Source of the DNA: Entomortierella parvispora E1425
Lineage: Eukaryota; Fungi; Mortierellomycota
Assembly (NCBI GenBank): GCA_020891255.1
Contig: BQFW01000008.1
Location: 806,001-870,000 of the forward strand
Direction of reading: 5' to 3'
Length of the DNA: 64,000 bases
The notes beneath the pieces are model-generated. The model had not been told where the DNA came from, ran no database searches, and was given only the letters and a program-made list of their open reading frames with translations. The position numbers and the translations under genes were made by a program. Each line of letters begins with the position of its first letter. The stretch's first letter is position 1. Shown here piece after piece: positions 6,803-48,294 of this stretch.

Positions 6803-9800
6803 ATGAGCAACGTACCTGGTGAGGGTGTCCCTGCCCAAGAACCACCACCACCACAGGAACAGTTGGAACAGCAACAGCTGCTGCAACAGCAACAATTACA
6901 GCAACAACAGGAACAACAACAACAACTGCTACAACAACAACAGCAGTACCAACAAGACTTGCAACAGCAACAACAGCAGCAATATCAACAAGACTTGCAA
7001 GCACAGCAATCACTACAGCCACAAGGCCAAGAAGCTGCTGTCGACCCAAACTATGGACACAACTTGAATATCTCTTCCACTGCTACCAACTACTCGTCTT
7101 CCTCTTCTTCACAGCCCATCACAGTTGCAACTTCAACGAGTCCTCCTCCACAATGGAATGGCGACGGTGTGGGCGATAGTCAAGGTGGTTTGAACCCCAA
7201 CCAGGTCCAGTACCCACAACCACAGGCTCTCCAACAACAACCGCAACACCAACAACAGCCGGCTTCTCCCCAAAAACAGGAGGCGCACGGGCAGGCACTA
7301 ACAGCCTTGCAAGGGAGGCCAATGGTGGACCCACTACCTGCCGTCCATGGACCATTCTCATTCACCCCCGAGGATCTCATGGACCTCATTGACCCCAAGT
7401 CTCCAGAGAAACTGGAAACCTGTGGAGGCGTCGAAGGCATCCTGGCTGGTCTGCATTCAGACCCTGTTCGGGGACTGACTACACCCGGCAACACTCATTT
7501 GGACCGTGTTGTTGCGGATGCAACTGAAAAGGTCGATGCTCTAATGTACAAAGGTCCAGGCGATGCATCAACGGTTTCGTTCCATGATCGAGAGCAATAC
7601 TTTGGCCGGAATGTGTTGCCAAAGCGAAAGCCAAAGTCCATCTTTCAGCTAATGTGGATTGCCCTGCAGGAAAAGATCTTGGTGAGGACATTATGACCGA
7701 ATGACGACGTCGTTATTTGAGAAAGAAGAGTGGTGGTGGTTGGTTGCAATGCATTGGGCCATCCGCATCCCTCTTTCAACTTGTCCGTGCACCGTCGCCT
7801 TGGCAAAGACGGAGTCAACTGCAACGCGGTCCCGACGCGTTTTGGTGGAACCAAGCCCTTGTTCTATTTCTAACAAGTCTTTTTTGTTCTCTTTTCCCGT
7901 TGCTTCGCCTTTCCCTTTTTGTTTCTTGTGTGTCCTTCTTTAGATCCTGTTGTTGATCGCCGCCATCATCTCGATTGCCTTGGGTATCTATGAGGATTAC
8001 GGCATGAAGCATGAGCCCACGGAGCGCTTCAACCGTGACTTCACGTCTTATTATGCGACCGACCCAAAGATCTCTTGGGTCGAGGGTGTGGCCATCTTGG
8101 TCGCCGTCATCATTGTTGTCATGGTCGGGTCCATCAACGATTATCAAAAGGAAGCTCAGTTCCGAAAGTTGAACGCAAAGAAAGAAGATCGAGAAGTCAA
8201 GGTATACACCTCAAAATTGAATGAAAAAGAAAAAAATGGACTAAGGGATGGAATGTGGAATGAAGATCGATCTTTGTCATGTACGGCTGTTGACCCTTGA
8301 CTTTCTCGAACCCCTCAACCCCCCGTTCACTCCCCTAAAAAACAACAACAACACGTAGGTCCTGAGAAATGGAGAGACAGTCCTTCTTTCAGTCTATGAT
8401 GTTCTCGTAGGCGATATCCTGCATCTTGAGCCCGGTGATGTGATCTCTGCCGATGGTCTCTACCTTGGAGGACATAACTTGAAATGCGACGAGTCAGCCA
8501 TGACAGGAGAATCGGATGCGGTCAAAAAGGTTACCTTTGAGGAACTCAAGAAGCTTGAAGAGGCAGAGGCAGCAACACATATGGGCGAGAGCAAGATTCA
8601 GACCAACCACGAGGGCATCGAAGTCATTGCAGAACCTCAGCATGGAATTCATGGAATCGACCCATTCATCATCTCTGGATCCAAAGTTCTGGAAGGCGTG
8701 GGTCTCTATGTGGTCACAGGCGTGGGTCAAAACAGTTTCCATGGAAAGACTATGATGTCTCTTCGTACGGAGGCTGAAGACACGCCTTTGCAGGTCAAGC
8801 TGAACCATTTGGCAGAACGTATTGCCAAGTTGGGTAGTTTGGCAGCTTTGCTCATGTTGATTGTGCTCGTCATCCGATACTTTGTCAACTTCAAATCCAA
8901 GGGTACTCCAGCCTCGGCCGAGATTGTAAAGAGTTTGGTCGATATTGTGATTGCTGCTGTGACCGTGGTCGTGGTGGCCGTGCCCGAGGGTCTGCCCTTG
9001 GCTGTGACGTTGGCTCTGGCGTTTGCAACCACTCGGATGCTCAAGGATAACAATTTGGTCCGCGTGCTGGCTGCTTGTGAGACTATGGGAAATGCAACAA
9101 CGGTCTGCTCAGACAAAACTGGAACTCTGACTCAGAATCGGTAAGATATCTTGCTCCAGCCGATGATATATAGCACTGTGAAGGCCCTTTTCTAATATTT
9201 TCATTTTCTCGATAGCATGACTATTGTGGCTGGAACACTTGGACTCAACACGCGTTTTATTGCAGATGTACCTGAAGGCGACAACAACCCTCGAGCAGCC
9301 ATCCCAATTAATAAGCACGCTTTCCCCATGAGCCAACTTGTCAACAACCTGCCCAACGCTGTAACTCAATTGATGCATGAAGCGATTGCGATCAATTCTT
9401 CGGCCTTTGAGAGCGAGGACGACAAGGGTAATCTCGCCTTTATTGGATCCAAGACAGAGGTGGCGCTACTGGACTTTTCGAAAAAAATTGGTGGCGCTGA
9501 TTACAGACAACTTCGAGAGGCGACCCCCATTGTCCACCTGTACCCATTCTCATCGGAGCGGAAATCCATGGCGACAATTGTTCAGATGGGACCCAACAAG
9601 TACCGATTGCATGCCAAGGGTGCTTCCGAAATCATAATGAAGCGTTGTGACAAGGTCCTGCAGATTGCTAGCACGGGCGATCAGCCGCTCTCAGAGAAGG
9701 ACCGCATGGCGGAAGTGACTGAAGTGGACCTGGTCGGTGATTTGCAGACGCAAGTACACAAGACCATTATCTCGTACGCGACCCAGTCTCTTCGAACCAT

Positions 9801-11544
9801 CGGTATTGGCTACCGCGACTTTGAGTCTTGGCCTCCAGCCGGTGTCGAGCTAAATGAGGATGGCGAGGTTCCTTTTGCAGCTGTGGCAGAGAGCAACCTG
9901 ACACTCATCGGTGTCGTCGGTATCGAGGATCCTCTGCGCGATGGTGTCCCAGAGGCCGTGTTGGCCTGCCAGAGAGCCGGTGTCTTTGTCCGTATGGTCA
10001 CTGGAGACAACATCTTGACTGCAAAGTCGATTGCGACTCAATGCGGTATCTACACTCAGGGTGGTATTATCATGGAAGGACCCAAGTTCAGAGCACTCAG
10101 TGGCGAGGAAATGGATGTTGTCATTCCTCGTCTCCAGGTCTTGGCCCGTTCCAGTCCCGAGGACAAAAAGATTCTTGTTGGACGACTCAAGGCTATGGGC
10201 GAGATTGTGGCCGTCACAGGTGACGGAACGAACGATGGTCCTGCGCTCAAGATGTCTGATGTCGGTTTCTCGATGGGTATTGCTGGTACTGAAGTCGCCA
10301 AGGAGGCTTCGTCCATTATCTTGATGGACGACAACTTTTCCAGTATTGTCAAAGCCATTCTTTGGGGTCGTGCTGTCAACGATGCGGTCAAGAAGTTCCT
10401 GCAATTCCAACTTACGGTCAACGTGACAGCTGTCATCCTTACCTTTGTTACTGCTGTCGTCTCTGATAAGCAAAAGCCCGTCATGTCTGCGGTTCAGCTG
10501 CTTTGGGTCAACTTGATCATGGATACTTTGGCTGCCTTGGCCCTTGCAACCGACCCCCCAACCCCGGATTTGCTTGACCGTCAACCAGAACCTAGAACGG
10601 CTCCCTTGATTTCTTTCACTATGTGGAAGATGATTCTTGGCGAAGCCATCTTGCAGCTAACGATTACATTCGTACTCGAGTATGCAGGCATGGATATTCT
10701 AAACTATGATGAGGTGCCCGATTACCTTGCGGACCGTGTGAGACAAAACCCCAAGATCGCGGATGCTTACACAGGATTCAAGCGGCAAGAACTGGATACG
10801 ATGGTCTTTAACACGTTTGTGTTCCTCCAGATCTTTAACGAAGTCAACTGTCGACGACTGGATAACCACCTCAACATCTTTTCGGGTATTCAACGGAACC
10901 GATACTTCTTGGTGATCTTTGTGATCATGGTCGTGTTTCAGGCAATCATTGTCCAGTTTGGAGGTGCAGCTTTTGAGACGGAAAAGTTGAATGGCATCCA
11001 ATGGTTGATCTGTATCCTTTTGGGACTCTTGTCGATTCCCGTGGGCGTGATTATTCGTTTGTTGCCGGATGAGCTCTTCTGTGGCCTCAAGAACAGGATT
11101 GATCGTCCCACGGCCCCCACAGGAGGTATTCCCAACTTTGAACACTATGCCGGTGGTGCGGTTGGCGTTGGAGGCGGCCTTAGTGGAGGCAACGTGAACG
11201 AAGTTGGTCGTGTAAACTCGATGCCAGGATCGATCACATCCGCAGGCATGGGCATCAATGGAAACCGCGATGGCCTCGTGTGGAACTCGGCCATTACCAA
11301 AGTACGATCAGAACTCTCTGTCTTCAAGGCCCTCCGAGGCGGTCGCTTGAGTGGAGATCCAAAACTGGGTGGAAGCCATGTGCTGCATGCAGGAGCTATG
11401 GTCCCGTCTTTGGTCGCGACGTCCGTAGGCGCGGGATGGGCCCCGAGGATGTCGGGTAGTGGCGCTGGAGAATATGGCAGTGCCAGTCCACGTTCAAGTA
11501 TGATGGGTTCGCGTCAAGGCACGCCTCAAATTGGAAGATCTTGA
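6803..11544 (+). CDS. PMC1: P2B-type (PMCA-like) calcium-transporting P-type ATPase, ~1415 aa, 4 exons
   Basis: Exons 6803-7681, 7944-8201, 8359-9140, 9216-11544. Motifs: TGES (A domain), VPEGLPLAVTL, CSDKTGTLT (phosphorylated Asp), KGASE, MVTGDN, TGDGTNDGPAL, QLLWVNLIMDT. Q-rich N-terminus. Confidence 0.96.
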
Positions 11545-13500: not shown

Positions 13501-16500
13501 ATGACCCAGCAGAGTCGGCAGCAACGCACCACTCGCTGGCTGCCAGTCTTCATCCTCGTCCTCCTCTGCACCATCCTCCTCCAACTGCTTGCCCGCAGTC
13601 GTTCCTTCTCCTCTCCGTCTACAGACGCCACCACCACCAAAAATAGCCCTTCCTGGCGGAGTAATACTCGCGACACTTTTCCCCTTGCTATCCTAGGGAA
13701 CGCCAACAGCCAGCGCCAGGACAGCATTCATGCGCCCACCAGGCGGAAGCAACCCTGGCACCACAGGGCAGACGACACCGGCACGGACACTGACCGCATT
13801 GACGACCTGGACGACAATGACGATCACTCGGGCGAAGGCAAGTCCCTCATGCTTGCAGAAGGGATCATGCCAGAGCTGACCAGCTGGGGCGAAGTCGCCA
13901 ATGAGGAGGAGGACGACCCAACGGGGGAGACTGCCTCCCCCACAACGCAGACATCCATTTCTGCAGAGCAACGGTCCAGAGGACTGGGCCAGCAACCGCA
14001 ACAGCTCCGGGTCAACATTGCTCAGACTATCTGCAACTCGATCACACCGCAGACATTGGGCCCCGGCTGGAATGGCTCGTTCGCCAGCAACTCGCCCGAC
14101 GGCGTGTACCCAAGTACAAACAGGTCCTGCACCTGGACCATTTACGCAGCAGCAGCTAATAATACTAGCCCAGGAGGCGCTAGTCCCACTCCCAAGTCCA
14201 GCGGCCTCGCCGTTGAGTGGAGACACCAAAGCAGTCGCGACCTCTCCTTATATTGTCGCGCTGACTTTCTCCACACCCATTCAACTCGTCTGCGGGTAAG
14301 GCAACAATGACCACGAGGAGAAGGGGGTGGAGACCATGGAGGATGACAAAGGGCCAAAAAGAAAAAGAAAAAAGCCGTTGTGAGTCCCTGCCTGATGCCG
14401 ACTGACCCTTTTTTTTGTTCCCTTGATCCCTTTCTTATCTCAAGGATCGACTATCTGACGCTGTATGACGGCCCTGACGCGACATGGCCCGTGATTGCAA
14501 CGCTTTGCGGAAACATCTGGATGGACACGATACCGACCTTGTATTCGTCAGGACCAGTCATGACCGCTGTCTTTTCATCCCAGGCAAACACCCCTGGATC
14601 GTTCGGATTCACAGCAGTGTGGTATTCGACTCGTAAGGCAGTGCTGGGAAACGCGATGACGCGCCGTTTTGTTTGTTCTTATTTTGCCCAATGGGTGAAC
14701 AAGGGCTGTTGTCTAATTCTGGATGTTTTGATGCCTTCCCGACTCTTCGTCTGATAGTGCCATGTTCAGTGTGTGTGCCCTCAGGGAGAGGAACCTGCAG
14801 TGCAAACACTTGTGTCTGCAATAGCAAGACGAGCGGCGTGGTTTGCGACCAAGGTACACGGAGATCTGTTTTATTTTTACCACTAGTGGCGCACCCAGTT
14901 GAATAATTCTTAAAATACATTCCCCCTTTTTATGTTTTCTAGACACGGCAGGATTCAAGGACTTTTTACCAAGGTCGCTACATGCTATGGCATATGATCC
15001 TGCCAAGGACATGGTCTATATCACTGGCGGAACAAATGCGCAAAACGTGTACTTGAGCGTATTAGACGTGCTTACCTACAACTTTGGTAAGTTCAGGGAA
15101 TGATTCATTTGATTTCAGAATTTCAAAATAATGGGCTTTCCTCTCCTTTGGGTAATCAAGGCTGGTAGCCATGTGTCTCTGTGGAGCTAACACTTACCCC
15201 TTGGAATTGCGTTTCATAACAGACAGTAACAGATGGAACCAGATCACAGCCACAACCAGTGGGCAAAAGGTCCCATACGCGCGATACGGCCATTTCGCCT
15301 TTATCTACGACGGCGAGCTCTATATATATGGAGGCGTGTCTGTCATTGGAGGAATGGCGGATATCTGGAAGTTCAACGGGAAGCAATGGCTGCCTCAGAC
15401 GCCTTACAACCAGGAACTACTGCCTGTTGGCAGGGCAGGCGCCGCCTGTGCATTGGTCACCGTCAACAATTCAACACAGTTGGTATCCTTTGGCGGCCTC
15501 GACTCCAGTAACAACACTGCACGGGACCTGTTTATGTATGATCTCAATACATCCATGTGGAAACAGTCGGCGCACAAGAACTCTGTTGGGTTGGCAGGCG
15601 CCAGTGCAGTATATCACAAAGCCACAGAGTCGATTTATTTCTTTGGCGGCATGGTCAACCAAACCACTCGAAACACTGTCGTGTTCCAGTACTCTATTCA
15701 ACAGGATCTCTGGTACGAGTTGGCGCCTCGTATCGATCCCCTTACTGCCACGCCGGTGACCCCCTTGAATGGGCAAGAGCCCTCCAACCCCTTCAATACC
15801 ACCAACGGCGACGGATACGATTCCGGGGAGGATAGCAGTGAACTTCAGAGCAATACCACCACTTATTTGCCACCGGTCATGTATGATCCCTTATCTGGAG
15901 TTTGGGCACCAGCCAGTCTCGCAGGCGACGATACGGTAGTGATATACGGAGGAATGAGGCCCTTCGGACCCGGCGTCAATGTCCGCGACCAATCCTGCTA
16001 TATCCGGACCATATCGTTTTATGATCTTTGTAAGTTGTGAAACCAAATAGCTTTTACGATGGGGCAGAGCATTCATTACGCGATAGAAAAAAAAAGCTAA
16101 CATGATATAACATTGTGTTATAGCCTGTCAAAAATGGACATCTTATGAAGCAGCAGATTTGGGAGGAGTCCTGTACAGCCGTGTCAATCATACAATGGTG
16201 ATTCGTCCACCTGGGTCGCAAGGTGGAAGCAAAACCTCTTATACCGGTACGCGACAGACCCTCGAGCAGCTATTGTTTTCCTTGCAAGAATCCAAAAACT
16301 AACATGACTTATTTTACTGTCGATTACATAGCCTATGTCTTTGGAGGATTCGACGGCATGTACCATTCTGACATGCTGAATATTACTTTGACTGTACCGA
16401 CACCACCACCCACGCCCGCGGAAATCAACACTTGCCGAGGTATCAATTCAATAATTGTTGAAGGAGATAATGTTGTATTTATTTCCGCCTTTATCTAATA

Positions 16501-19226
16501 TATGCTCTTCTATCGTAGCTTTGAGATGGTGTGGTTATTATGACGACTGTCAGTACTGCAATGCAAACTACTGCTCTTATGTTGGAGGTCTGTGTCTTTT
16601 TGACACGGACAAGGCCAAAGCGCCCTTGAGTCCGTCGTCCCCACCGTTCCTCCTAGGCACTTCTGCCGATATACCCAAGAATGGTACTCTTCAAGATCTC
16701 ATTCGGCAACGGCCCGACCTCAAGTCACAGATTATCACACCCGATCAATGTCCAATCCGTCTGCTACTTCAACTGGGCACCACCTACTCCAACTCTATTC
16801 AGTCGGGACAGGAGATGACATTCAACATCTACATTGACTCGCCCAATCTGGACATTCAATATGAGATCAGGACAAATCCGGTGCAGACTCTCAACTTCAA
16901 GACATTGAACGTCTGGGAGGGATTTATGAACATGTATTGGCGCGCAGATCACGGATTGACGGACAATTCCTGGAATGGTTACTCGTGGACGTCCTCGCCC
17001 ATACCACCGGATGCGACCGACAACAATGGTACCGATGAGGCTGTGATTACTCCCGCTGGGGTCTTGAACGTGAGCGAGCTCGAGAATCGATGGCAGCGGT
17101 ATGCAGGATTGGATAACTCACCTACGTCTTCGGCTTTGACGGCGGCCACCACTTCCTACATTTACTTTCCGGCTGACGATCCCAGGCGATTCTCAGGATA
17201 CTACGTCTTTTCATTGACCAACAATCATTCTTCTGCAATGTCGTTCACGCTCACCGTGTCGTTGCTGGATCGACCAGCACCCGTGGGACCCAACACGGGA
17301 TCGAAATTCAACTTGGCGACTTTGGGTTATTTCATGGTGGGTTTCATGTTGTGTGTCATGCTATTGATCGTGCTTGGACGCAAGATTCGACAGTTTCTGG
17401 AACGGCGTGATCTGGAGATGCGTGCGGCAGCAGAGGCAAGGATGTTGGAAGAAGAAGAAGCAGAAGCAGAAGAGGAGGAGCGTCGGCGGTTGGCGATGGC
17501 ACTCCGGGGTGAGAATGGAGGGGATATGAAGGACTGGAAGCCCATGTACAAGGTTGTGGTTGGGGTTCAAGCAAAACGACAACAGGACCGGTTTGAGGAC
17601 GAAAAGGGCTGGTCCAGTTCAAGGAATCTGTCGACAACTTCGCTTCTTTCGCCTCGCTCTGCTGGTCGGGGCGCCTCAGGCAGGACGTCCAGGAAGGCAT
17701 CCATGTCGCTGTCAGCGTCAGCGTCAGCAGTCGGCGATTCTCCACCAGACGATTTGCCTCGGTCTCAATCGGATTCTTGTGTTCCAAAGGAGGACTCGGA
17801 CGCGAGACCGAAATCCGATTTCATTCGTGACTTAGGATCCACCCCACAGCACTCTACAGGAGGAGACTCGTCGCTCAGGAGCATGACGGCGTCAGGAGTG
17901 AGCATGGATGCGGTCCATGAAGAGGAGGACTTGAGACAGTCTGGCAACAAAGAGTCTAGTCATGGATCCACAACGTCGTCCAAAAAGATTTCTATCCGAC
18001 TGGATCGTCGCCCGAGCCACACCAGTCAAGGTCTGCACCATCCTTCCCATGGACTGCAGGATGACCTGCGCGTGGGATCTGCGGCTGGAGTGCAACGAGG
18101 TTGGTCTCTAAAGAGTCTGAGCAGGTCCACGTCTTTGAGGAGGATCCGGGATCAATCCAAAGTCAACCCAGAGGAGATAGAGGGGCTTACCAGTCAGGAT
18201 CAAGTACGCATGTCACCAGAGTTGGACCAGCAGCAACTACAGCAGCAGCAGCAGCACCAGCAGGGCAACGACTCTGAGCAGGAAGTGATTGAGCTGGATG
18301 TGTTGTCTCGACAAAGAAGTAGACATGGACATGATGCCATGTATGCTCACCCATCCGACGCTTCTCAATGGGAGCTGAGTCAACTGTTACGGCAGCAACA
18401 GCGCAGGAGAAATCCTATTCGAGTTCAACCAATCTCGATAGAGCCATTGCCTTTCCACGGAGGTCTGGTGGCCAGGACTCGAAGGAATTTCAAGCGCTAC
18501 CAGAGACATTTGGCAAGATCAGCAGCAGCAGCTCAAGGACAGGCCCAGTACGAATACGAGGAGGAGAGAAGGAAGTATTCATTAAGGAGAGCCAACTTGT
18601 CTCGATCTTCGGCTGGATCATTACGGAACGCCCACGGCGCTGCTTCCAGGATGGCATCCCTGACACGGAAAGCCACGAACAGTACAGCTGGCGCCTATGA
18701 CGACTGTCAGGAGGCTGTGGTCGACATCCCGTTCTCGGAGGAGGAAGGAGGTCCCGTCGATCATGGTGCCACCACCGCTGCCGCCTCTGGATCGGGTCAG
18801 TTTGCATCAGGTACCCCCAGTCAACGGAAGGAAGGACGAGAGTTGCCAAAAAGAAAACCGATTCGGATGCGTGGACGACAGGAATTTGAACCGGGTCCAT
18901 TGTTGGCGCTGAATGTTTTAATTGTCTTTCCTGGCGATGCGGGCACCCGACCTGTCCAACGGCTGGGTGATGAGGATGCAGAAGGGGACAGCGATGGTGA
19001 TGGCCATGATGTTACGCCCCCTCGCAAAAAGACAGGGCCCTGGGCGAGTAGTGCAGCGACAGGACTGGATTCTGTCAATGAAGACCAACGTTTGCCACCT
19101 ATGGCGATCGGAACGGTATTCGTGCCGGATCCTGTACGATGGTGGGCCTACAAGGCTCAGCAGCAACGGGATCGAATGCACATCGATATCCAGATGAAGA
19201 AAAAGAGTAGCTTTCACAACTACTAG
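13501..19226 (+). CDS. Attractin/MEGF8-like type I membrane protein (N-terminal hydrophobic segment, CUB, EGF-like, Kelch repeats, Cys-rich PSI-like region, TM, long cytoplasmic tail); frame break in exon 1
   Basis: Exons 13501-14295, 14445-14632, 14758-14853, 14943-15086, 15223-16029, 16124-16246, 16332-16439, 16519-19226. CUB: YPSTNRSCTWTI, CGIDYLTLYDGP, GFTAVW. EGF: CSVCVPSGRGTCSANTCVC..C. Kelch: RYGHFAFIYDGELYIYGG, YFFGG, YVFGGFDG. PSI-like: WCGYYDDCQYCNANYCSYVGGLC. TM: LGYFMVGFMLCVMLLIVLG. Every junction is in phase except within exon 1. Confidence 0.8.
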
Positions 19227-21120: not shown

Positions 21121-23639
21121 TTACAACGAGGCAGAGGTCGAGGAGGGAGGGTTCTCGTGGTTGATGTACTTTTCATCCTGGGCCGTCACCTCAGTGCCCA
21201 GCAACTCGTGCAACTTGTCCTGGAAAGGACGCTTGCCCAACAAACGCTCCATATCCGCCCGGTTCAAGACCTCCTTCTCCATCAACAACTGGGCCACCTT
21301 TTCCACATCGGCTCTCTTTTCCGTCAAGAGATCCGTGGTGCGACGGAAGGCCTGACCAATCAAGGTCCGGACGCGAGTATCGATGATCTGTCCCGTCTTT
21401 TCACTGTAGGGTTTCGTGAACTGATCCTTGTTGTCCTGGTTTCCGTATGAAAGAGGTCCCAACTCATCGTCCATACCGTATGTAGCCACTAACAAAAATA
21501 AAGATATAAAAAACAAGGTTAGATGTCATTACGCATGGATCGCTTGTGTCTTGTTTGAACGACGCGTTGTTTTCTCCCTTTCTTTTTACCTTGAGCATAG
21601 GCCATCTTTGTGACCTTTTGCAAATCGTCCTGGGCACCAGTGGTAATGGTGCCAAAGAAGATGTGCTCCGAGACGCGACCACCCAGAGTCATGCACATGC
21701 GGTCCATCAATTGCTGAGTCGAGTACAGGTACTGGTCCTTGGGCAAGTACTGAGCGTAACCAAGAGCACCGACGCCACGGGGAATGATCGAGACCTTGAG
21801 CAAAGGATCGGCGTGCTCCAAGTACCATCCAGCAACAGCATGTCCAGCCTCGTGGTAAGCCACAGTCTTCTTTTCCTCAGGTGAGAGGACCTTGGACTTC
21901 TTCTCCAAACCAACAATGACGCGCTCGATCGCGGCCTCGAAATCAGCCTCGACCACAGTCTCCTTTCCGTGACGGGCAGCGATCAACGCAGCCTCGTTAC
22001 AAACATTGTGCACATCTGCTCCCGAGAATCCTGGGGTCAAAGCAGCGAGCTTTTGAGACAACTTTGGAATATCCTCGTCGGTCTTGATAGGTCCAAGGTG
22101 GACCTTGAAAATGTCCTGACGACCCTTGATATCGGGGCGATCAATAGCGATGTGACGATCGAAACGACCAGGACGCATCAAAGCATCATCCAGAACATCG
22201 GGACGGTTGGTACCGGCCAACACGACAACGTGTTCATTCGAGCCGAATCCGTCCATCTCGACCAAAAGCTGGTTCAGTGTGCTCTCACGTTCATCATTGC
22301 CTCCAAACTGACCGCCCTTGCCACGGGCCTTTCCGATAGCATCAATCTCGTCCACAAAGATAATGCAAGGCGCATGCTTCTTTGCATTCGCAAACAGATC
22401 CCGGACACGCGAGGCTCCAACACCGACAAACATTTCCACGAATTCCGATCCAGAAACGCTCAAAAAGGGTACACCGGCCTCGCCTGCAGTGGCCTTGGCC
22501 AAAAGGGTCTTTCCGGTTCCGGGGGGTCCACTGAGGATTGCGCCCTTGGGGATCTTGGCGCCCAACTTTTCATAGGCGGCAGGGTTCTTCAAGAACTTGA
22601 CAAACTCCATAATCTCGAGCTTGGCTTCATCCATGCCGGCCACATCCTTAAACTTGACAGCAATGTCGGTCTCTTGGTTGAACATCTTGGCCTTGGATTT
22701 ACCCACACCAAAGATACCCGATCCACCACCGGCACCACCGGCACCCTTCTTGGCCATGAAGACCAAGACACCGATCATCAACAAGGTGGGTGCAAAGTGG
22801 AGCAACGTGCCCAAGACATTGACCTCATCACGGAACGAGACTGGAATACGCTCCGATCCGGGAATACCCAGCTCGGCCTGAGCCTCCTCCAACTTGCGCT
22901 CAAAGGCCTCGACCGAGCCAATGCTGAAGGTATAAGTCGTTCCATGAGCCTGACCCAATGTTCCGGGGATCTGAGAAGGGGCATCACCACGGAGGTAGAC
23001 ACGAACACGGTTCCTGTTCAGGACCACCAAGCGATCCACCAAGCCACGATCCAAGAAAGTGGACCGGAACTCTTGCCAGGTGATCTCTCTGAGGTTATCG
23101 GAGGGGGACATGGCCTTGTAAAGAACATAGGATGTAAAGGCCAAAGGCAAGACGGTGCCTGGGTTCAAGGTCATGCTGTAGAACTGACCCTCGGGAGGTG
23201 GCGTGGGCTTACGGCCACCGCCGATAGGCTGCTGTGGTTGTTGTTGCCTGTTACCGCTATTGTTGTTGTTGTTGGATCGGTTCGAGTTGGTATTATTGTT
23301 GGTGTTTCTGTTACCAGCAGGGTTGTTGCCTCCGTTCTTGGTGGCCTGGCCATTGTTCTCGAGTTGCTTTGCGGCATCTCGAAGCATCTTGCCAAAAAAG
23401 TTTTCGATCGAGGGAGGACCATCGTTGTTGTTGTTGTTGTTGTTGTTGTTTCCGTTGTTTCCGTTGTTGTTGTTGCCCTCCTTGGGGTTCTTTGGGGGCT
23501 GCTTCTCAGAAGAGAAGAATCGGGTGCGGATGCGCTGTGGGTGAGGGTGCTGATTGACCAGGGAGTAAGATCTGGCGAGCAGTCGAGAGCATCTTCCTCC
23601 GGCGAGGGAGGATGCAGCCCTGGAGAAGGATGAGCTCAT
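21121..23639 (-). CDS. AFG3: Mitochondrial m-AAA protease subunit (AFG3/YTA12/AFG3L2 family), ~805 aa, 2 exons
   Basis: Exons 21590-23639 and 21121-21488. Presequence-like N-terminus, two TMs, [11 protein letters not shown], Walker A GPPGTGKT, Walker [19 protein letters not shown], zinc motif [16 protein letters not shown]3 versus YTA12 cannot be resolved by eye. Confidence 0.93.
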
Positions 23640-23865
23640 GAGGGAGAAGGGAGGAAGGGGAGGAGATGGACAAAGAAAAGAGATGAATGAATAAAAGAAG
23701 AAAGAGAAATGAATGAACAAAAGAAGAAAAGAGAAGAGAGAGAAGAGAAGAGAGAGCAGGGAGCGCAGTGGCAAAAAAAAAAAAAAAAAGAGAGTGCGAG
23801 AACAGAGAGAGGAGGAGGAGCAAGAATCGACTGTGTGTGTGTGTGTGTGTGTTGTGTGCCTGGGA

Positions 23866-23945
23866 GTGAAAGTGTGCAGTTCTGCAGTAGTGTGCAGTGT
23901 GTGCAGTTGTGTGCAGTTCTGCAGTGTGCAGGTGAAAGTGTGCAG
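23866..23945. repeat. Array of six GTGTGCAG and two TTCTGCAG units in the AFG3/KH divergent intergenic region
   Basis: GTGTGCAG starts at 23872, 23890, 23899, 23909, 23924 and 23938. GTGAAAGTGTGCAG occurs twice (23866, 23932). Confidence 0.8.
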
Positions 23946-24531
23946 ATCGGTCGGAGTGTGTGGGATATGATACATACTCGAGTCAACGAAAGGTTGCCAG
24001 CCAGAAAAGGAGAAAAAATCACTGGGGGCGTGCGTCACCTTTGGGTGTCTTCTTCTTGGTCCTCTTCTTCTTCTTCTTCTTCTTCTTCTTCTTCCTGGCG
24101 TTGTTCTCTGTCTTCCTTCTTGTACATGTACATGTATCCTTCATCTGTGCAAACACCGTCTTAGAAGACACATCCCGCTGTTCCTTGTTCCTGTTCCTGT
24201 TCCTGACCCCACCCTGCTTTGCCACCAAATTGTGTCAACACACCCTTCCTCGCAGTCACACTCACGCACGTGACTAAAGGACCCTTTGACCTTTCCTTCC
24301 ATTCTGCTCCAATAATATTTTTCACCTTGTGCGCTTCCTTTGTCTTTTTTCTTCCTTACGCCTTCTCTTGTTTTTGTTCACTCCATCTTCATCCTCTCTC
24401 CTCCTCCTCCTCCTCCTCTGTCCGTCCGTCCCGCCTCTCCCCCTCTCTCTCTTCATCTCCTCCTCCTTCATCACCCCTGTCCTCCCCCTCTCCCTTCAAG
24501 CTCCCTCTCTCTTTTCCAGCCAACTTTCAAA

Positions 24532-43596: not shown

Positions 43597-44904
43597 CGGA
43601 TGCTGAGTTCAGGTAAATATAAGAGATGAAGAATGTCCCCTAAGAGCAGACGAATGAAGGTCGCAGATGGAGGGGATGATGGTTGCAGCCGGGCTCCTGT
43701 TCAAACAACAATCCAGAGAAAGGCGACGGGAACGAGGGTGATGTCGATGGAGCGGACAGGAGGGGAACGGAACCGCAGAAGGGAGTGATGGACAAAGGAA
43801 GAAGGGAATGGATGGATGACACCTGGAGAGGAACAAAGTGGCATGAACTGAATCAAGATAATTATTCTCAGGATACTTTAAATTTTATTCGACAAAACTA
43901 TACTTAGAAACCAAAATCGCCACGTAAAACTGCGCCCAAGGCACAAAAGCAGCAAGAGGCGGGAAAGGCCCGATCTGGGAACCCATTCTAGAAATGAAAG
44001 AGAGACCAAAGGACGAGAGCGCTCAGCTGCCCGCGCAAGATTGCAGACGAGCGCTGCTGAAGATAATTGCAATTTGAGAGGACAGGACTAAGCGGTTCTT
44101 TTCAGTGCCTATCCTCTGTCAAGGACATGTTGTGCCGTGCGTGTGGTTGGCTGTCCCTTCTTTCTTTCCCAGCAGGTGGCAATGGGTTGGGTTGCACTTA
44201 TCCCATGGCCCAACTTGTGTCCAAAGGCGAATCTTCTTTTTGCCCTTCTCTCTTTTGTCCATCCACCCACCCCTTTCCCTCCTTCCTTCTGTACCCTTTG
44301 CTCCTTTACCTGCTCTTTCCTCATCGCCCATTCGCCTCCATTCACATCTGACAAAACCTCGTCTTCGAATCAATTCATCTCAGCATCCCTGCATTTTTTT
44401 TTTTTTTTTTCACTGAGTCTTCTTTGTCCGTTCTGACACTCCTGTTTTTCTCAGGTACCGAACTCTTCTCTGTTCAAGGTGCATCTCCAGGGGACATATT
44501 GTTTGATCTAGTGCCCTGAGATACTGGGAGGTAGTGTTATACCCCGAAACACGCGTCAACATGGACGCGTCGTTAACGGACGAAACTGTCTTGTAGATGG
44601 TGCTCCTTGGTCCCTTTTGGCCTCCTCCTTCCCCACTCCTGGTCTTTTATTTCTGACCTTTCTCAAAAGGAGCACCGGCGCCTTTTAGCCTCCACCCCCG
44701 CTGACTCTCATTCTTTGCTCTTCTTGCCTCCTTTATGACAACGATCACCCCGTCATCGTTCATGCAACCACAGACTTGAACAGTTGTACCTCAAACAAAC
44801 TGCAGCCAAACTCACAAAAACCTCCTTTGTTCTGGTCCTCTTCTTTTTTCATTCCTTCGCTTTTTTCCTTTGTCAAAATCCATTTTAGCACCACTACTCT
44901 GGAC

Positions 44905-47900
44905 ATGTCATCACCCCCCGCTACCACCAACACCGGCGGTCACATGGACCCCACACCACCCTCCGCCATCTTTCAGTCTTATCACGCACAACTTGAAAGT
45001 CTTCAAAAGCTTCCTGTACCATATGGAGAGATATATCATGCCCTCTCGCACAGTGACTCTGCACCACTTCAAACCCTCGATACACAGTACCAGAAAGCAG
45101 CCTCAGATATCACACAATGGCTTGAGGCTGCAGAGATGACCGTATTCGGTCTCGAGATGGACGTGGAACAGGACGGCAACAGCAGTCAACGAGATGTGGG
45201 CAATATTGAAGTAATAATGAATCGATTTCAACCCAATATCGGCATGCTGCTGGAGCTCAGGGACAAAATTTCTCAGCGATTGGACAAAGACGAGGACAAA
45301 ACAATTATCGACAAGGCTCTTGTCGACCAATCGGCCAGTCAAATCCAATCCAGCTGGACCGCACTCAAATCGTTGCTGGACAAAGTCAAGGACCTCCTCT
45401 CCGAAACTCGGACTCGAGGCGATCTGTTGACGCAAATGGAAAACGTGGTCGCCGATATTGAAGAGATTAGTGCCGAAATTGATGCCATCCAGGCTCAAAA
45501 ATCATCGCCCACCGGACAAAGTCTGGATTCGACTGCTTCACGGCTCTTGCAGACACCAACAAGTCCGCCTCTGGTATCTTCAACATCCACTCTCGACACA
45601 ACCACGGCGGCGGCGGCTGCGACAAATGCATCCGGACTAGGTGTATCGGCCAGTTCAGAGAATTTACTGACGACAAACAAGGACAGGAATACGGATTTGC
45701 TGGCTCATGCGGATTCTTGCATTGAGGCCCTGGCGACGAGAATGGAGTTTCTGCGGGTACAGATTGACATCTCGTCATCCAACATTTCAAGTTCGGATCC
45801 CATTCGAGAGCAATATGATCATATTCAACATATGTGGAGCGAAATGAAGGCAAGACGAGACAAGGTCAGTGACGAGATCAAGGAAGCAAGGTGGCTCGCC
45901 GTTTTTGATCAGGTCGCAGGTCAGGTCGAGTCGATGATGGAGTCTACAGAGCGCGCCGTTATTCACTGCAAGGGGCTCGTAGATCAGATCAAGACCATGG
46001 TCCGAGACAAGGTCATCCCTGATGCACCTATCGATCGAGATCATCTCTACACAATCTTCAAGAGCTTTGAAGCCAAACACAAATACTACGCACCGGCCGT
46101 CAACAAGATGCTAAATATGTTGCAAAGCGGAATTGAGAGTCGAATGACCAAGAACACGGATGTGATTGGCAAGCATGCAGCCATGAAACAGCGATGGGAG
46201 CAGCAAAAGCAGGAGCTCGACCGTGTGGAACAGGATTTGGAAGGAATTGAGCGGCTCTTGGACATTTTGGATGCCTCCATCCCCTCGCAAACACCTACTC
46301 CTCCTCCACAGCTGCCCGAGAAACCAATCTTTGCGATGAGGCGATCGCAGACACAGCCTGGATGGAATTCATCAGGTCCTCAATCACAATTTCAGCCACC
46401 CTCTCAAAACCAACAGCAGCGGGGACGACGTCCAGCGGAGGAATCAAGTGCTCGTTCACGGCGGTTACAGTCACCTAACCCACCGCCGTCTACAACAAAC
46501 ACTCGCAGTCGCCCATGGTCGCCTGCTCCGTCTGTGAGCAGTTTACCATCTCTTCTCTCTCCAAACCCATCCAACAATTACCGATCACTTAGCAAAAGTC
46601 CTTCTCGATCGCCTTCCAGAGTCCCCAACTCTGACAAACTTCGACCATGGTGCCCAAGGTAGGTTGAATTGAAGGTGCATGCTTTGCAATGGAACTATCA
46701 TTGGATAATTCTTGACATTTTTTTTTCCTGGGGGGTTCTTTTTTTCTTTCTTTTTTATTTTTTATTTTTGAATAGTACGACCAAAACATCACCGTCGATC
46801 CCCGGTATTCCTTACTCACCTTCTGCTGCATCCACATATACCCCTCGATCGATGTCTGCTTCAGGACAGAGTCGTGCGACCAGTCCTTCACCTTCACCGG
46901 CACAGTCAAGGCCTACATCTTCACTTTCCCGAACTAGAAGTATTTCTTGCACGCCATCGCTCAATCGGACACCCAGTCAGCTTAAACCAGCATTTACTCC
47001 TGCTGGCAGTTTGAGCAAGCTATCGACAGGCGTAGCTCGTTCAAGCTCTCCAACACCTCCTCCTGCTGCGGCCTCGAGTACAAGTTTACGCCGTGCACAG
47101 CTCAAACTGCCACCTCCTGTGGTCATAGATCCTACACGAATGCGTCAAAACTCTGCCCCGGGGACGCCCATGCCTCAATACAGCCGTCGATCCAGCAGTC
47201 CTTTTGGCCGCGATTCTACTTCGTCTTCATCTACCTCTTCGCTCGCAGCCACCACTGCCTCATCTTCCTCATCTTCAGTCCGTACTCCTGTCTTTTCCCC
47301 TCCGGCTGCCCGAACCAGGCAGGCCATTTCACAAAGTAACCAAAGTGCCACTCAATCAAGGTTGCCACCGCAACACCAACAAAATGACACTTTATTGACC
47401 CGCACCCGCCGACCCTCTCTCGGTTACACCTCTTCCAAATCCGTCAGATCTGTAGCGTCCTCTTCCTTGTCCTCTCTGTCCTCTTCCTCCTTGACCTCTA
47501 GAGATCGGGACACGATTGATTCTGCCTATGGTTCAGTCTCGGGCCACCTTTTTCCTTTAGATGGACCGATCAGTCCCACCACCTCGTCTTCCTCTGCTTC
47601 TTCAGTCACATCCGCTCATTCTTCCTTGTCGTCTAGCTCTTCGTCTTTTGGTCGATTGCGCTTGTCACGGTTCCACCAGCTTCAACCCCAAGGCTACTCG
47701 CCGCAGCTTCAGAATCAACAAGAGGACGAGTTACCGGAACTGATGGATGATCTAAGCATTCAGGTACAGGACATGGCCCCTTATGTCCCTGCACGGGAGA
47801 GCGAATTGGATGAAGAGTTTGCCAAGATTATCAATACTCATCCAATCCAGATGAAGGTTTGGCGACTGGGAGAAGGGAAATATTATTTTGGAGGTCGAAT

Positions 47901-48294
47901 GGAGGAAACGCCTGGAGGTAGTTTGACGGCCGTTGGTGGCAAGATGGTCCTTTGTCGGTTAATGGAATATGGTCGATTGGGCGTTGCGAGTCCCCTGTCG
48001 GGTGATTTGATGTCCTCGCCGGTAGATGAGGAAAAGAGAATGCTTCCTCCGATTGGAAGACCCTCAGGACCCCGCTCGCGCTCGTCGTCCGTGGTCTCGA
48101 GACGATCGTCCGTGTCTAGTAACGCCAGTGATCGAGAGGTCCGATCAAGGACTACATCGCTGACAGGCGCATCTGGACGAAGTCGCAAGGTGATGGTTCG
48201 AGTGGGTGGAGGATGGCAAGACCTGGATATCTTCTTGCTGGATCATAGCTCGCTTGCGGACGAAACCGTTGTCCTTCGAGGTCTGCGGGCATGA
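44905..48294 (+). CDS. KAR9-like helical domain plus C-terminal GAS2/GAR microtubule-binding domain protein, ~1090 aa, 2 exons
   Basis: Exons 44905-46658 and 46776-48294. KAR9-like: EARWLAVFDQ..MMESTER..FEAKHKYYAPAV. GAR: LDEEFAKII..RLGEGKYYFG and VMVRVGGGWQDLDIFL. Confidence 0.82.

What the first reader, a model, noticed from the sequence alone, without database searches (positions are those of the whole stretch)
13501..19226. Attractin/MEGF8-like receptor in a fungus, with the animal cytoplasmic motifs scattered through a ~600-aa tail
Seen: CUB-EGF-Kelch-PSI-like-TM architecture. The tail has short islands inside S/R/Q-rich spacers: RKIRQ next to the TM, KPMYKVVVGVQ (~17538), VQPISIEPLPF (~18423), LLALNVLIVFPG (~18900) and PPMAIGTVFV (~19095). 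Established, from memory: the compact attractin tail reads WKIKQ..MASRPFASVNVALE..PKPIALEPCF..AAVLSVFVRLPRG..SGLAVASALV and recruits the RING ligase MGRN1 to down-regulate receptors such as Smoothened and melanocortin receptors. The islands appear in the same order. Inference: a fungal ATRN/MEGF8-type membrane-tethered ubiquitin-ligase adaptor whose tail fold assembles from dispersed strands. I know no such system in yeasts or filamentous ascomycetes.
Basis: partly seen in the sequence, partly recalled or inferred. Interest (0 to 1): 0.8.

Follow-up and report, generated by a model that had tools for sequence, protein, structure and literature searches.

The report
Attractin-like receptor in a Mortierella-family fungus
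A soil fungus of the Mortierella family encodes a membrane receptor built like animal attractin/MEGF8, a family that published surveys place only in animals and their close relatives. Its 615-residue cytoplasmic tail keeps four short strand-forming islands in the animal order, but whether they bind a ubiquitin ligase was not tested.

Summary
Window 13501-19226 (+) is one eight-exon gene for a type I membrane protein: signal peptide, CUB, EGF-like, six-bladed Kelch propeller, PSI-like module, beta-sandwich stem, one TM helix and a 615-aa tail. The four islands lie at the stated coordinates.

The organism is Mortierellaceae, not an ascomycete. Relatives occur in Mortierellomycota, Mucoromycota, Chytridiomycota and Blastocladiomycota, and none from Dikarya was found. 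Many are already auto-named 'MEGF8' in GenBank.

Ectodomain homology to animal attractin is secure (hhalign probability 100, E 1.8e-53 over CUB-EGF-Kelch-PSI).

Tail homology is supported but not proven.
- For: the islands are near-invariant among about 70 fungal homologues. Other fungal phyla carry them in compact 100-280-aa tails. AlphaFold2 puts its only four strands on the islands, after a TM-plus-single-helix like MEGF8's. My colinear block test is significant. The stem model has the fold neighbours published for the MEGF8 Stem.
- Against: HMMER profiles find nothing in either direction. hhalign on the tail is weak (P 0.02-0.03). The MASR part of the animal MASRPFA motif is absent.

An MGRN1-type ligase in this fungus could not be searched. 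An apparent 1-nt frameshift interrupts the CUB exon.

The parts
13501..14295 (+). Exon 1: start codon, signal peptide or anchor (LPVFILVLLCTILLQLL), acidic low-complexity linker and the N-terminal half of CUB. An apparent +1 frame change lies between 14148 and 14242.
   Evidence: Searches give the frames. In tblastn with P0004 and P0010, CTWTI reads in one frame and YIVALTFSTPIQLVCG in the next, and no plausible intron lies between them.
14445..14632 (+). Exon 2: C-terminal half of the CUB domain.
   Evidence: Pfam CUB; 65-69% identity to homologues; hhalign against attractin CUB.
14758..14853 (+). Exon 3: EGF-like module (CSVCVPSGRGTCSANTCVCNSKTSGVVC).
   Evidence: Weak Pfam EGF_2 hit; aligned with the attractin EGF in hhalign.
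14943..16439 (+). Exons 4-7 (14943-15086, 15223-16029, 16124-16246, 16332-16439): attractin-type Kelch beta-propeller.
   Evidence: PF24981 Beta-prop_ATRN-LZTR1, E 2e-27; exon boundaries and tblastn.
16519..19226 (+). Exon 8: PSI-like module, stem, TM helix and the whole cytoplasmic tail, ending in the stop codon.
   Evidence: Open frame of 901 aa; 71 homologues.
16755..17276 (+). Juxtamembrane stem: a jelly-roll, CUB-like beta-sandwich (exon-8 aa about 79-252).
   Evidence: AlphaFold2 model, pLDDT 79.6. VIA-align 2 neighbours are SIDT1/2 (Z 10.4-11.0), ColG CBD 1nqd (Z 10.7) and C. perfringens enterotoxin (Z about 8). The MEGF8 paper names the same neighbours for its Stem.
17322..17495 (+). 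TM helix (aa 268-286), RKIRQ, and an E/R/A-rich single alpha-helix reaching about aa 325.
   Evidence: AlphaFold2 gives one continuous helix at 265-325 and at model 4-68. hhalign aligns the TM and juxtamembrane stretch with attractin LDLxQFF...WKIKQ, P 0.007.
17538..17570 (+). Island 1, KPMYKVVVGVQ: predicted strand beta1 (aa 343-349).
   Evidence: P341, Y343 and G348 are invariant. It is a strand in the AlphaFold2 model. The match to the animal RPFAxVxLxL is not significant on its own.
17814..17840 (+). Mortierellaceae-specific conserved island SDFIRDLGS, with no animal counterpart.
   Evidence: D433 and I435 invariant; no match in the animal tail.
18096..18119 (+). Mortierellaceae-specific conserved island RGWSLKSL, followed by an RSxSLxR stretch.
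   Evidence: no match in the animal tail.
18423..18455 (+). Island 2, VQPISIEPLPF: predicted strand beta2 (aa 635-642).
   Evidence: Q636, P637, S639, E641 and P642 are invariant. Its best ungapped profile match is the attractin PVALEP site, empirical p 0.007. It is a strand in the AlphaFold2 model.
18900..18935 (+). Island 3, LLALNVLIVFPG: predicted strand beta3 (aa 794-802).
   Evidence: G792-L794, N798 and F803-D806 are invariant. Its best match is attractin VLSLIVRLP. hhalign aligns it. It is a strand in the AlphaFold2 model.
19095..19124 (+). Island 4, PPMAIGTVFV: predicted strand beta4 (aa 861-869).
   Evidence: L858-G864 are invariant. Its best match is attractin LAIASALV. hhalign aligns it. 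It is a strand in the AlphaFold2 model.
19131..19220 (+). Conserved C-terminal helix (PVRWWAYKAQ...), a fungal addition.
   Evidence: Invariant P871, R873, W874 and W875. AlphaFold2 helix at model 610-639, with block-mean pLDDT rising from 73 to 91.

Best explanation
The gene encodes a fungal member of the attractin/MEGF8 lineage of type I membrane proteins, in a minimal form: CUB, EGF, Kelch propeller, PSI, Stem, TM.

Its cytoplasmic part has the plan now known from the MEGF8 cryo-EM structure. The TM helix continues into a charged single alpha-helix. Then come one beta-strand and three further strands. [quoted passage not shown]

In Mortierellaceae the four strands are kept but are separated by about 285, 151 and 58 residues of low-complexity linker, which carries extra lineage-specific motifs.

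Most likely mechanism (inferred, not shown): the four islands come together and bind an MGRN1/LOG2-type myristoylated RING ligase. The receptor would then act as a membrane-tethered substrate adaptor that lowers the abundance of some plasma-membrane receptor or transporter.

Shown here: ectodomain homology, island conservation across four fungal phyla, and the predicted strands and helix. Inferred: tail homology to animals, ligase binding and function.
For: - Ectodomain: a fungal profile against 20 animal attractins gives hhalign probability 100, E 1.8e-53, 474 columns spanning CUB-EGF-Kelch-PSI. Among the candidates scored, the best named non-fungal hit sharing the Kelch ectodomain was a tick attractin (E 1.6e-44); three non-fungal hits scored higher, two unnamed repeat-rich metagenome proteins and a CUB-only tolloid.
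- Stem: the AlphaFold2 model (pLDDT 79.6) has as top neighbours SIDT1/2 ectodomain, ColG collagen-binding domain and C. perfringens enterotoxin. Williams et al. 2025 name these same three for the MEGF8/attractin Stem.
- TM and helix: one continuous helix, aa 265-325, as in MEGF8. The TM and juxtamembrane stretch aligns with attractin, P 0.007.
- Conservation: the islands are invariant or nearly so in Mortierellaceae. They are present in compact tails of Jimgerdemannia, Lichtheimia, Apophysomyces, Nowakowskiella and Coelomomyces.
- Predicted strands: AlphaFold2 places its only four strands on the four islands.
- Colinear test: islands 2-4 each find their predicted attractin site as the best ungapped profile match. 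The chain score is 68.6, against 49.2 +/- 3.5 for shuffled columns, 56.0 for reversed blocks and 41.5 +/- 2.5 for natural decoy blocks. The native order ranks 1 of 120.
- Tested residues: the MEGF8 residues shown by mutagenesis to matter are V2633/V2635, T2702 and L2717. Using the 9qqs_B alignment, I map them to KVTV, PITLEP and TLLLQLP. The fungal counterparts are KVVVGV, PISIEP (S639 invariant) and NVLIVFP (L800). This mapping is my inference.
- Partner: published surveys report MGRN1-family ligases in almost all eukaryotic lineages.
Against: - The Mortierellaceae stem+TM+tail profile, searched against 1.84 billion representatives, found only fungi at E <= 0.001 and no animal protein.
- An animal tail HMM scores at most 6.6 bits on any fungal tail.
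- The fungal profile does not hit the MEGF8 chains in the PDB.
- Pfam GBD_ATRN (PF24972) hits animal stems but not fungal ones, and hhalign does not align the stem bodies.
- hhalign on the tail gives P 0.017-0.033 and empirical p 0.07.
- Island 1 does not pick the MASRPF site, and the MASR residues that define the animal family are absent.
- My chain test is home-made. Its shuffles destroy hydrophobic runs, so it may overstate significance.
- The tail model has low overall confidence (pLDDT 54.8), and I could not inspect which strands pair.
- No MGRN1 orthologue was sought in this genome.
- An apparent frameshift in the CUB exon could mean this copy is defective.
Confidence: 0.6

Rival explanations
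1. The ectodomain shares ancestry with attractin, but the tail does not. Under this reading the islands are short hydrophobic or proline motifs in a disordered, phospho-regulated fungal tail. They would serve another role, such as endocytic sorting, self-association or binding a fungal-specific partner, and their likeness to the attractin tail would be chance or convergence.
For: Standard profile methods give no significant tail match. MASR is absent. The tail carries several conserved islands and helices with no animal counterpart. Short beta-strand motifs are low in information: even tick attractin against mammalian MEGF8 gives only 8.9 bits over islands 2-4.
Against: Islands 2, 3 and 4 hit the predicted sites in the predicted order, and the native order ranks 1 of 120. 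The chain score exceeds all nulls. The number of predicted strands (four) and the TM-plus-helix plan match MEGF8. Compact fungal tails resemble the animal layout.
Confidence: 0.25
2. This copy is a pseudogene or a mis-assembled locus. The +1 frame change in the CUB exon would truncate the protein after about 265 residues, so nothing downstream is made from this allele.
For: The frame change between 14148 and 14242 shows up against two homologues. The only GT-AG option, 14114-14168 (55 nt), would delete the conserved CTWTI of CUB and is shorter than every other intron of the gene.
Against: The other 4.9 kb are intact. All seven splice junctions are in phase, and the window protein keeps every column that is invariant across 31 homologues. 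A single-base assembly error or a very recent change fits better. The family-level conclusions do not depend on this copy.
Confidence: 0.1
3. The protein is a cell-surface lectin or adhesion or wall-sensor protein that works through its ectodomain alone, with no link to ubiquitin.
For: CUB, Kelch propeller and jelly-roll modules are common in adhesion and carbohydrate binding. No ligase partner has been shown.
Against: This does not explain why four short cytoplasmic islands stay invariant across four fungal phyla while the linkers drift. It also does not explain the conserved TM-plus-helix plan.
Confidence: 0.05

Closest known systems
Attractin / ATRNL1 (vertebrates), Distracted (Drosophila), tag-53 (C. 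elegans)
   Same: It has a single CUB-EGF-Kelch propeller-PSI module in the same order. It has a beta-sandwich stem next to the membrane. One TM helix is followed by a basic [WR]KI[KR]Q and a helix, and then four short strand motifs come in the same order.
   Different: It lacks the C-type lectin, the laminin-type EGFs and the extra PSI repeats. No Pfam GBD_ATRN signal is detected. MASRPFA is reduced to P plus a hydrophobic residue. The tail is 615 aa against about 130 aa, with long linkers and extra conserved motifs.
MEGF8 in the MEGF8-MOSMO-MGRN1 complex (PDB 9qqs, 9qru, 9qsh, 9qty, 9qs6; Williams et al. 2025 preprint)
   Same: Both have a continuous TM-plus-single-helix, then one strand and a three-stranded sheet. 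The Stem fold neighbours are the same. MEGF8 also has a long spacer, about 64 aa, between strands 1 and 2.
   Different: MEGF8 has two tandem CUB-EGF-Kelch-PSI repeats and is about 2,800 aa long. Whether the fungus has MOSMO or MGRN1 partners is unknown.
Plant GDU1-LOG2
   Same: It follows the same principle: a single-pass membrane protein whose cytoplasmic motif recruits an MGRN1-family RING ligase.
   Different: GDU1 is tiny, has no comparable ectodomain, and is not homologous to this protein. The likeness is functional only.

Membership tests
Attractin/MEGF8 family | Colinear extracellular module of CUB, EGF, six-bladed Kelch propeller and PSI | tested here: met
   hhalign probability 100, E 1.8e-53, 474 aligned columns against 20 animal attractins. 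Pfam CUB and PF24981.
Attractin/MEGF8 family | Juxtamembrane Stem domain (Pfam GBD_ATRN, PF24972) | tested here: inconclusive
   By sequence: no Pfam hit and no hhalign alignment of the domain body. By structure: the AlphaFold2 model has the same neighbours as published for the MEGF8 Stem, namely SIDT1/2, ColG CBD and C. perfringens enterotoxin. MEGF8 itself did not appear in the fold library results.
Attractin/MEGF8 family | Single TM helix continuing into a cytoplasmic single alpha-helix, with basic WKIKQ-type start | tested here: met
   AlphaFold2 helix at aa 265-325. RKIRQ aligns with WKIKQ, hhalign P 0.007.
Attractin/MEGF8 family | Cytoplasmic MASRPFA motif | tested here: not met
   No MASR is present. 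Only P plus a hydrophobic residue precede strand 1 (KPMY). Island 1 does not find this site as its best match.
Attractin/MEGF8 family | Four ICD strands (beta1 plus a three-stranded sheet) with PxxLEP, hydrophobic-LP and LAxxSxLV-type motifs in order | tested here: inconclusive
   For: best-match positions, the chain test (z about 5.6) and order rank 1 of 120, and AlphaFold2 strands at the islands. Against: HMMER finds nothing and hhalign gives P 0.017-0.033.
Attractin/MEGF8 family | Binds an MGRN1/RNF157-type RING ligase | not testable with these tools
No RING gene lies in the window. The scan holds no note of one in this genome, which says little.

The most novel reading that the evidence does not exclude
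The attractin-MGRN1 membrane-tethered ligase would predate the split of fungi and animals. It would survive in all non-Dikarya fungal phyla sampled here.

In Mortierellaceae the co-folding ligase-binding domain would be split into four strands by more than 490 residues of S/R-rich linker. That linker carries conserved RxxS-type motifs. Assembly of the ligase-binding fold could therefore be a regulated, for example phosphorylation-gated, step rather than a constitutive one.
Probability: 0.2. Interest if true: 0.75.

Novelty: new variant of a known kind. Interest (0 to 1): 0.6.

Why it matters
The papers that defined this system place the MEGF8/attractin family only in animals and their close unicellular relatives (Filozoa), while MGRN1 is near-universal in eukaryotes. 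They therefore had to propose other adaptors elsewhere.

A true fungal member would move the origin of the receptor-type ligase back to the opisthokont ancestor. It would also imply loss of the family in Dikarya.

It would offer culturable fungi as a possible setting for asking what such a ligase regulated before Hedgehog and melanocortin receptors existed.

Four strands separated by hundreds of disordered residues would still have to assemble on the ligase.

Tried and rejected
- HMMER with the animal attractin tail against fungal tails gave no signal.
- The Mortierellaceae stem+tail profile against 1.84 billion representatives found fungi only. Against the PDB it gave only low-complexity noise. 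The single sequence against the PDB gave only titin noise.
- Pfam on the stem and tail found nothing.
- Foldseek with the tail model found nothing.
- hhalign in global mode gave a meaningless alignment.
- A 55-nt intron (14114-14168) as the explanation for the frame change is rejected. It would remove the conserved CTWTI, which homologues keep as coding sequence.
- Looking for an MGRN1 partner failed. A RING-motif scan of the window's six frames found none. Pfam on the ten largest other ORFs found a P-type ATPase, an FtsH-type protease, TPR, KAR9 and GAS2 domains. Scan notes for this genome hold none.
- Literature searches for fungal MGRN1 or fungal attractin found nothing. Supplements lacked readable phyletic data. 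Guerra et al. 2013 is not held.


Full report
**What is there**

Window 13501-19226 (+) holds one intron-containing gene. I read the three frames and the splice sites and checked them by tblastn with two homologues. This gives eight exons: 13501-14295, 14445-14632, 14758-14853, 14943-15086, 15223-16029, 16124-16246, 16332-16439 and 16519-19226.

The product starts with a signal peptide or anchor. It continues with CUB, an EGF-like module and an attractin-type Kelch propeller (Pfam PF24981, E 2e-27). The 901-aa last exon follows. It encodes a Cys-rich PSI-like module, a conserved stalk, one TM helix (aa 268-286), RKIRQ and a 615-aa tail.

One defect shows up. Inside the CUB exon, the conserved CTWTI reads in one frame and the conserved YIVALTFSTPIQLVCG in the next. 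The only GT-AG pair that would fix the frame (14114-14168, 55 nt) would remove CTWTI, so I read this as a 1-nt indel. It is either an assembly error or a very recent lesion. The remaining 4.9 kb are intact and keep every invariant family position.

**Whose gene it is**

All 71 database relatives of the last exon come from Mortierellaceae. An earlier scan note also calls this genome a Mortierella-family soil fungus. [quoted passage not shown]

I searched a profile of stem+TM+tail against 1.84 billion representative proteins. It found only 24 proteins at E <= 0.001, and every hit that could be named is fungal. Besides Mortierellaceae they come from:
- Jimgerdemannia (Endogonales)
- Apophysomyces and Lichtheimia (Mucorales)
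- Nowakowskiella and a Chytridiales species (Chytridiomycota)
- Sorochytrium and Coelomomyces (Blastocladiomycota)

The full-length ones carry CUB plus the attractin-type propeller, and some a PSI module. No Dikarya protein and no animal protein reached the threshold.

**Are the islands real?**

Yes. Among 50 and 31 Mortierellaceae sequences the islands are invariant or nearly so, while the S/R/Q-rich linkers are not alignable.

The non-Mortierella fungi have much shorter tails, about 100-280 aa, that carry the same four islands in the same order. Two examples:
- Nowakowskiella: PPKLYKVKIDL ... IPLSLESIP ... ALVAVNFIVVLPS ... RLPPCAIGTSFF
- Coelomomyces: TPMYTTHLVQL ... FIPISAQL ... PLVYVSYLICMPP ... 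LMVATGTFLV

Mortierellaceae add their own conserved elements: SDFIRDLGS, RGWSLKSL, helices after island 2 and a C-terminal helix.

**Is it an attractin/MEGF8 relative?**

The ectodomain is. A six-sequence fungal profile aligned to 20 invertebrate attractins gives hhalign probability 100, E 1.8e-53. The alignment covers 474 columns from CUB through EGF and the propeller into PSI.

Among the candidates the word filter passed, a tick attractin was the best named non-fungal hit sharing the Kelch ectodomain (E 1.6e-44). Three non-fungal hits scored higher: two unnamed repeat-rich metagenome proteins and a CUB-only tolloid.

The stem gives no sequence signal. Pfam GBD_ATRN hits animal stems but not fungal ones, and hhalign aligns only the TM and juxtamembrane part (P 0.007).

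Structure does give a signal. The AlphaFold2 model of exon-8 aa 1-360 (pLDDT 79.6) has a jelly-roll stem. Its best neighbours are:
- SIDT1/2 ectodomains (Z 10.4-11.0)
- the ColG collagen-binding domain (Z 10.7)
- C. perfringens enterotoxin (Z about 8)

Williams et al. 2025 name these same three as the neighbours of the MEGF8 and attractin Stem domain. MEGF8 itself did not appear in the fold results. It is in the sequence copy of the PDB (9qqs and others) but may not be in the fold library.

**The tail**

The published cryo-EM work describes the MEGF8 cytoplasmic part as follows. The TM helix continues into a single alpha-helix. The MASRPFA loop comes next. One strand then pairs with the RING edge strand, and a three-stranded sheet is clamped by the pre-engager and engager of MGRN1.

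AlphaFold2 on the window tail has low overall confidence (pLDDT 54.8). It still predicts a continuous TM-plus-helix of about 65 residues and exactly four strands. They fall at exon-8 aa 343-349, 635-642, 794-802 and 861-869, which are the four islands. The 10-residue blocks covering them have mean pLDDT between 57 and 78.

Standard profile tests do not establish homology to the animal tail:
- An HMM of 102 attractin tails scores at most 6.6 bits on any fungal tail.
- The fungal profile misses animals in the large library and misses MEGF8 in the PDB.
- hhalign on a fungal alignment reduced to its conserved blocks aligns islands 3 and 4 with the attractin LSLIVRLP...LAIASALV. The P value is 0.017-0.033, and the empirical p against shuffled columns is 0.07.

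For scale, tick attractin against mammalian MEGF8 gives only 8.9 bits over the same part. These motifs carry little information even within animals.

I then ran a test of my own. I defined blocks from fungal conservation alone. For each block I scored the best ungapped profile-profile match anywhere in the attractin tail:
- Island 2 lands on PVALEP (p 0.007).
- Island 3 lands on VLSLIVRLP.
- Island 4 lands on LAIASALV.
- RKIRQ lands on WKIKQ.
- Island 1 does not land on RPFAxV.

The best colinear chain of five blocks scores 68.6. The controls score 49.2 +/- 3.5 for within-block shuffles (0 of 1000 reach it), 56.0 with each block reversed, 41.5 +/- 2.5 for natural decoy blocks (maximum 48.1) and 37.7 against attractin ectodomain windows. 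The native order is the best of 120 orders.

This test is home-made, and its shuffles break hydrophobic runs. I take it as support, not proof.

**Functionally tested residues**

Mutagenesis in MEGF8 singled out V2633/V2635, T2702 and L2717. With an offset of 2311 on the 9qqs_B numbering shown, these fall in KVTV, PITLEP and TLLLQLP. All four residue types fit, which supports the offset. The fungal counterparts are KVVVGV, PISIEP (S639 invariant) and NVLIVFP (L800 nearly invariant). This mapping is my inference.

**Mechanism**

I conclude that this is a fungal, minimal attractin-type receptor whose cytoplasmic plan matches MEGF8.

The most likely function is the animal one: tethering an MGRN1-family RING ligase under the membrane so that it ubiquitylates neighbouring membrane proteins. 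That step is inferred. The window has no RING gene.

The literature says only that MGRN1 occurs in almost all eukaryotic lineages, while MEGF8/attractin proteins are restricted to Filozoa.

**Novelty**

I found no paper describing fungal attractin/MEGF8 proteins, and the defining papers state that the family is animal-side only. GenBank's automatic names already record the ectodomain likeness.

New here are the distribution across four non-Dikarya phyla, the conserved four-strand tail and its extreme expansion in Mortierellaceae. The MASRPFA motif, a defining feature of the animal family, is not met. I therefore file this as a new variant of a known kind rather than a plain new member.

Noticed in passing
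window 14148-14242: An apparent +1 frame change lies inside the CUB exon of an otherwise intact 5.7-kb gene. It is either an assembly error or a very recent lesion.
   Followed up: partly
window 17814-17840 and 18096-18119: Two strongly conserved tail islands specific to Mortierellaceae: SDFIRDLGS, and RGWSLKSL followed by RSxSLxR. Neither has an animal or chytrid counterpart. They may be phospho-regulated or partner-binding motifs.
   Followed up: no
P0082 (Sorochytrium milnesiophthora), residues 1024-1147: This blastocladiomycete homologue has an Arfaptin-like domain at its C-terminus. That is either a real fusion or a merged gene model.
   Followed up: no
P0127 (Dictyostelium purpureum): A Kelch-propeller protein that carries a C3HC4_3-type RING on the same chain. 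It turned up among the weak Kelch hits.
   Followed up: no
window 44776-48291 (+): Two adjacent long ORFs carry a KAR9-like domain and a GAS2 domain. They may be one microtubule-cortex linker gene.
   Followed up: no
window 9217-11541 (+) and 21519-24035 (-): The flanking genes are ordinary: a P-type cation ATPase upstream and an FtsH-type AAA/M41 protease downstream.
   Followed up: no
P0012, P0013, P0020, P0028, P0066 (Mortierella alpina) and others: Several Mortierellaceae species have multiple entries of this family that are only about 40% identical to the window protein in the last-exon region. This suggests paralogues.
   Followed up: no
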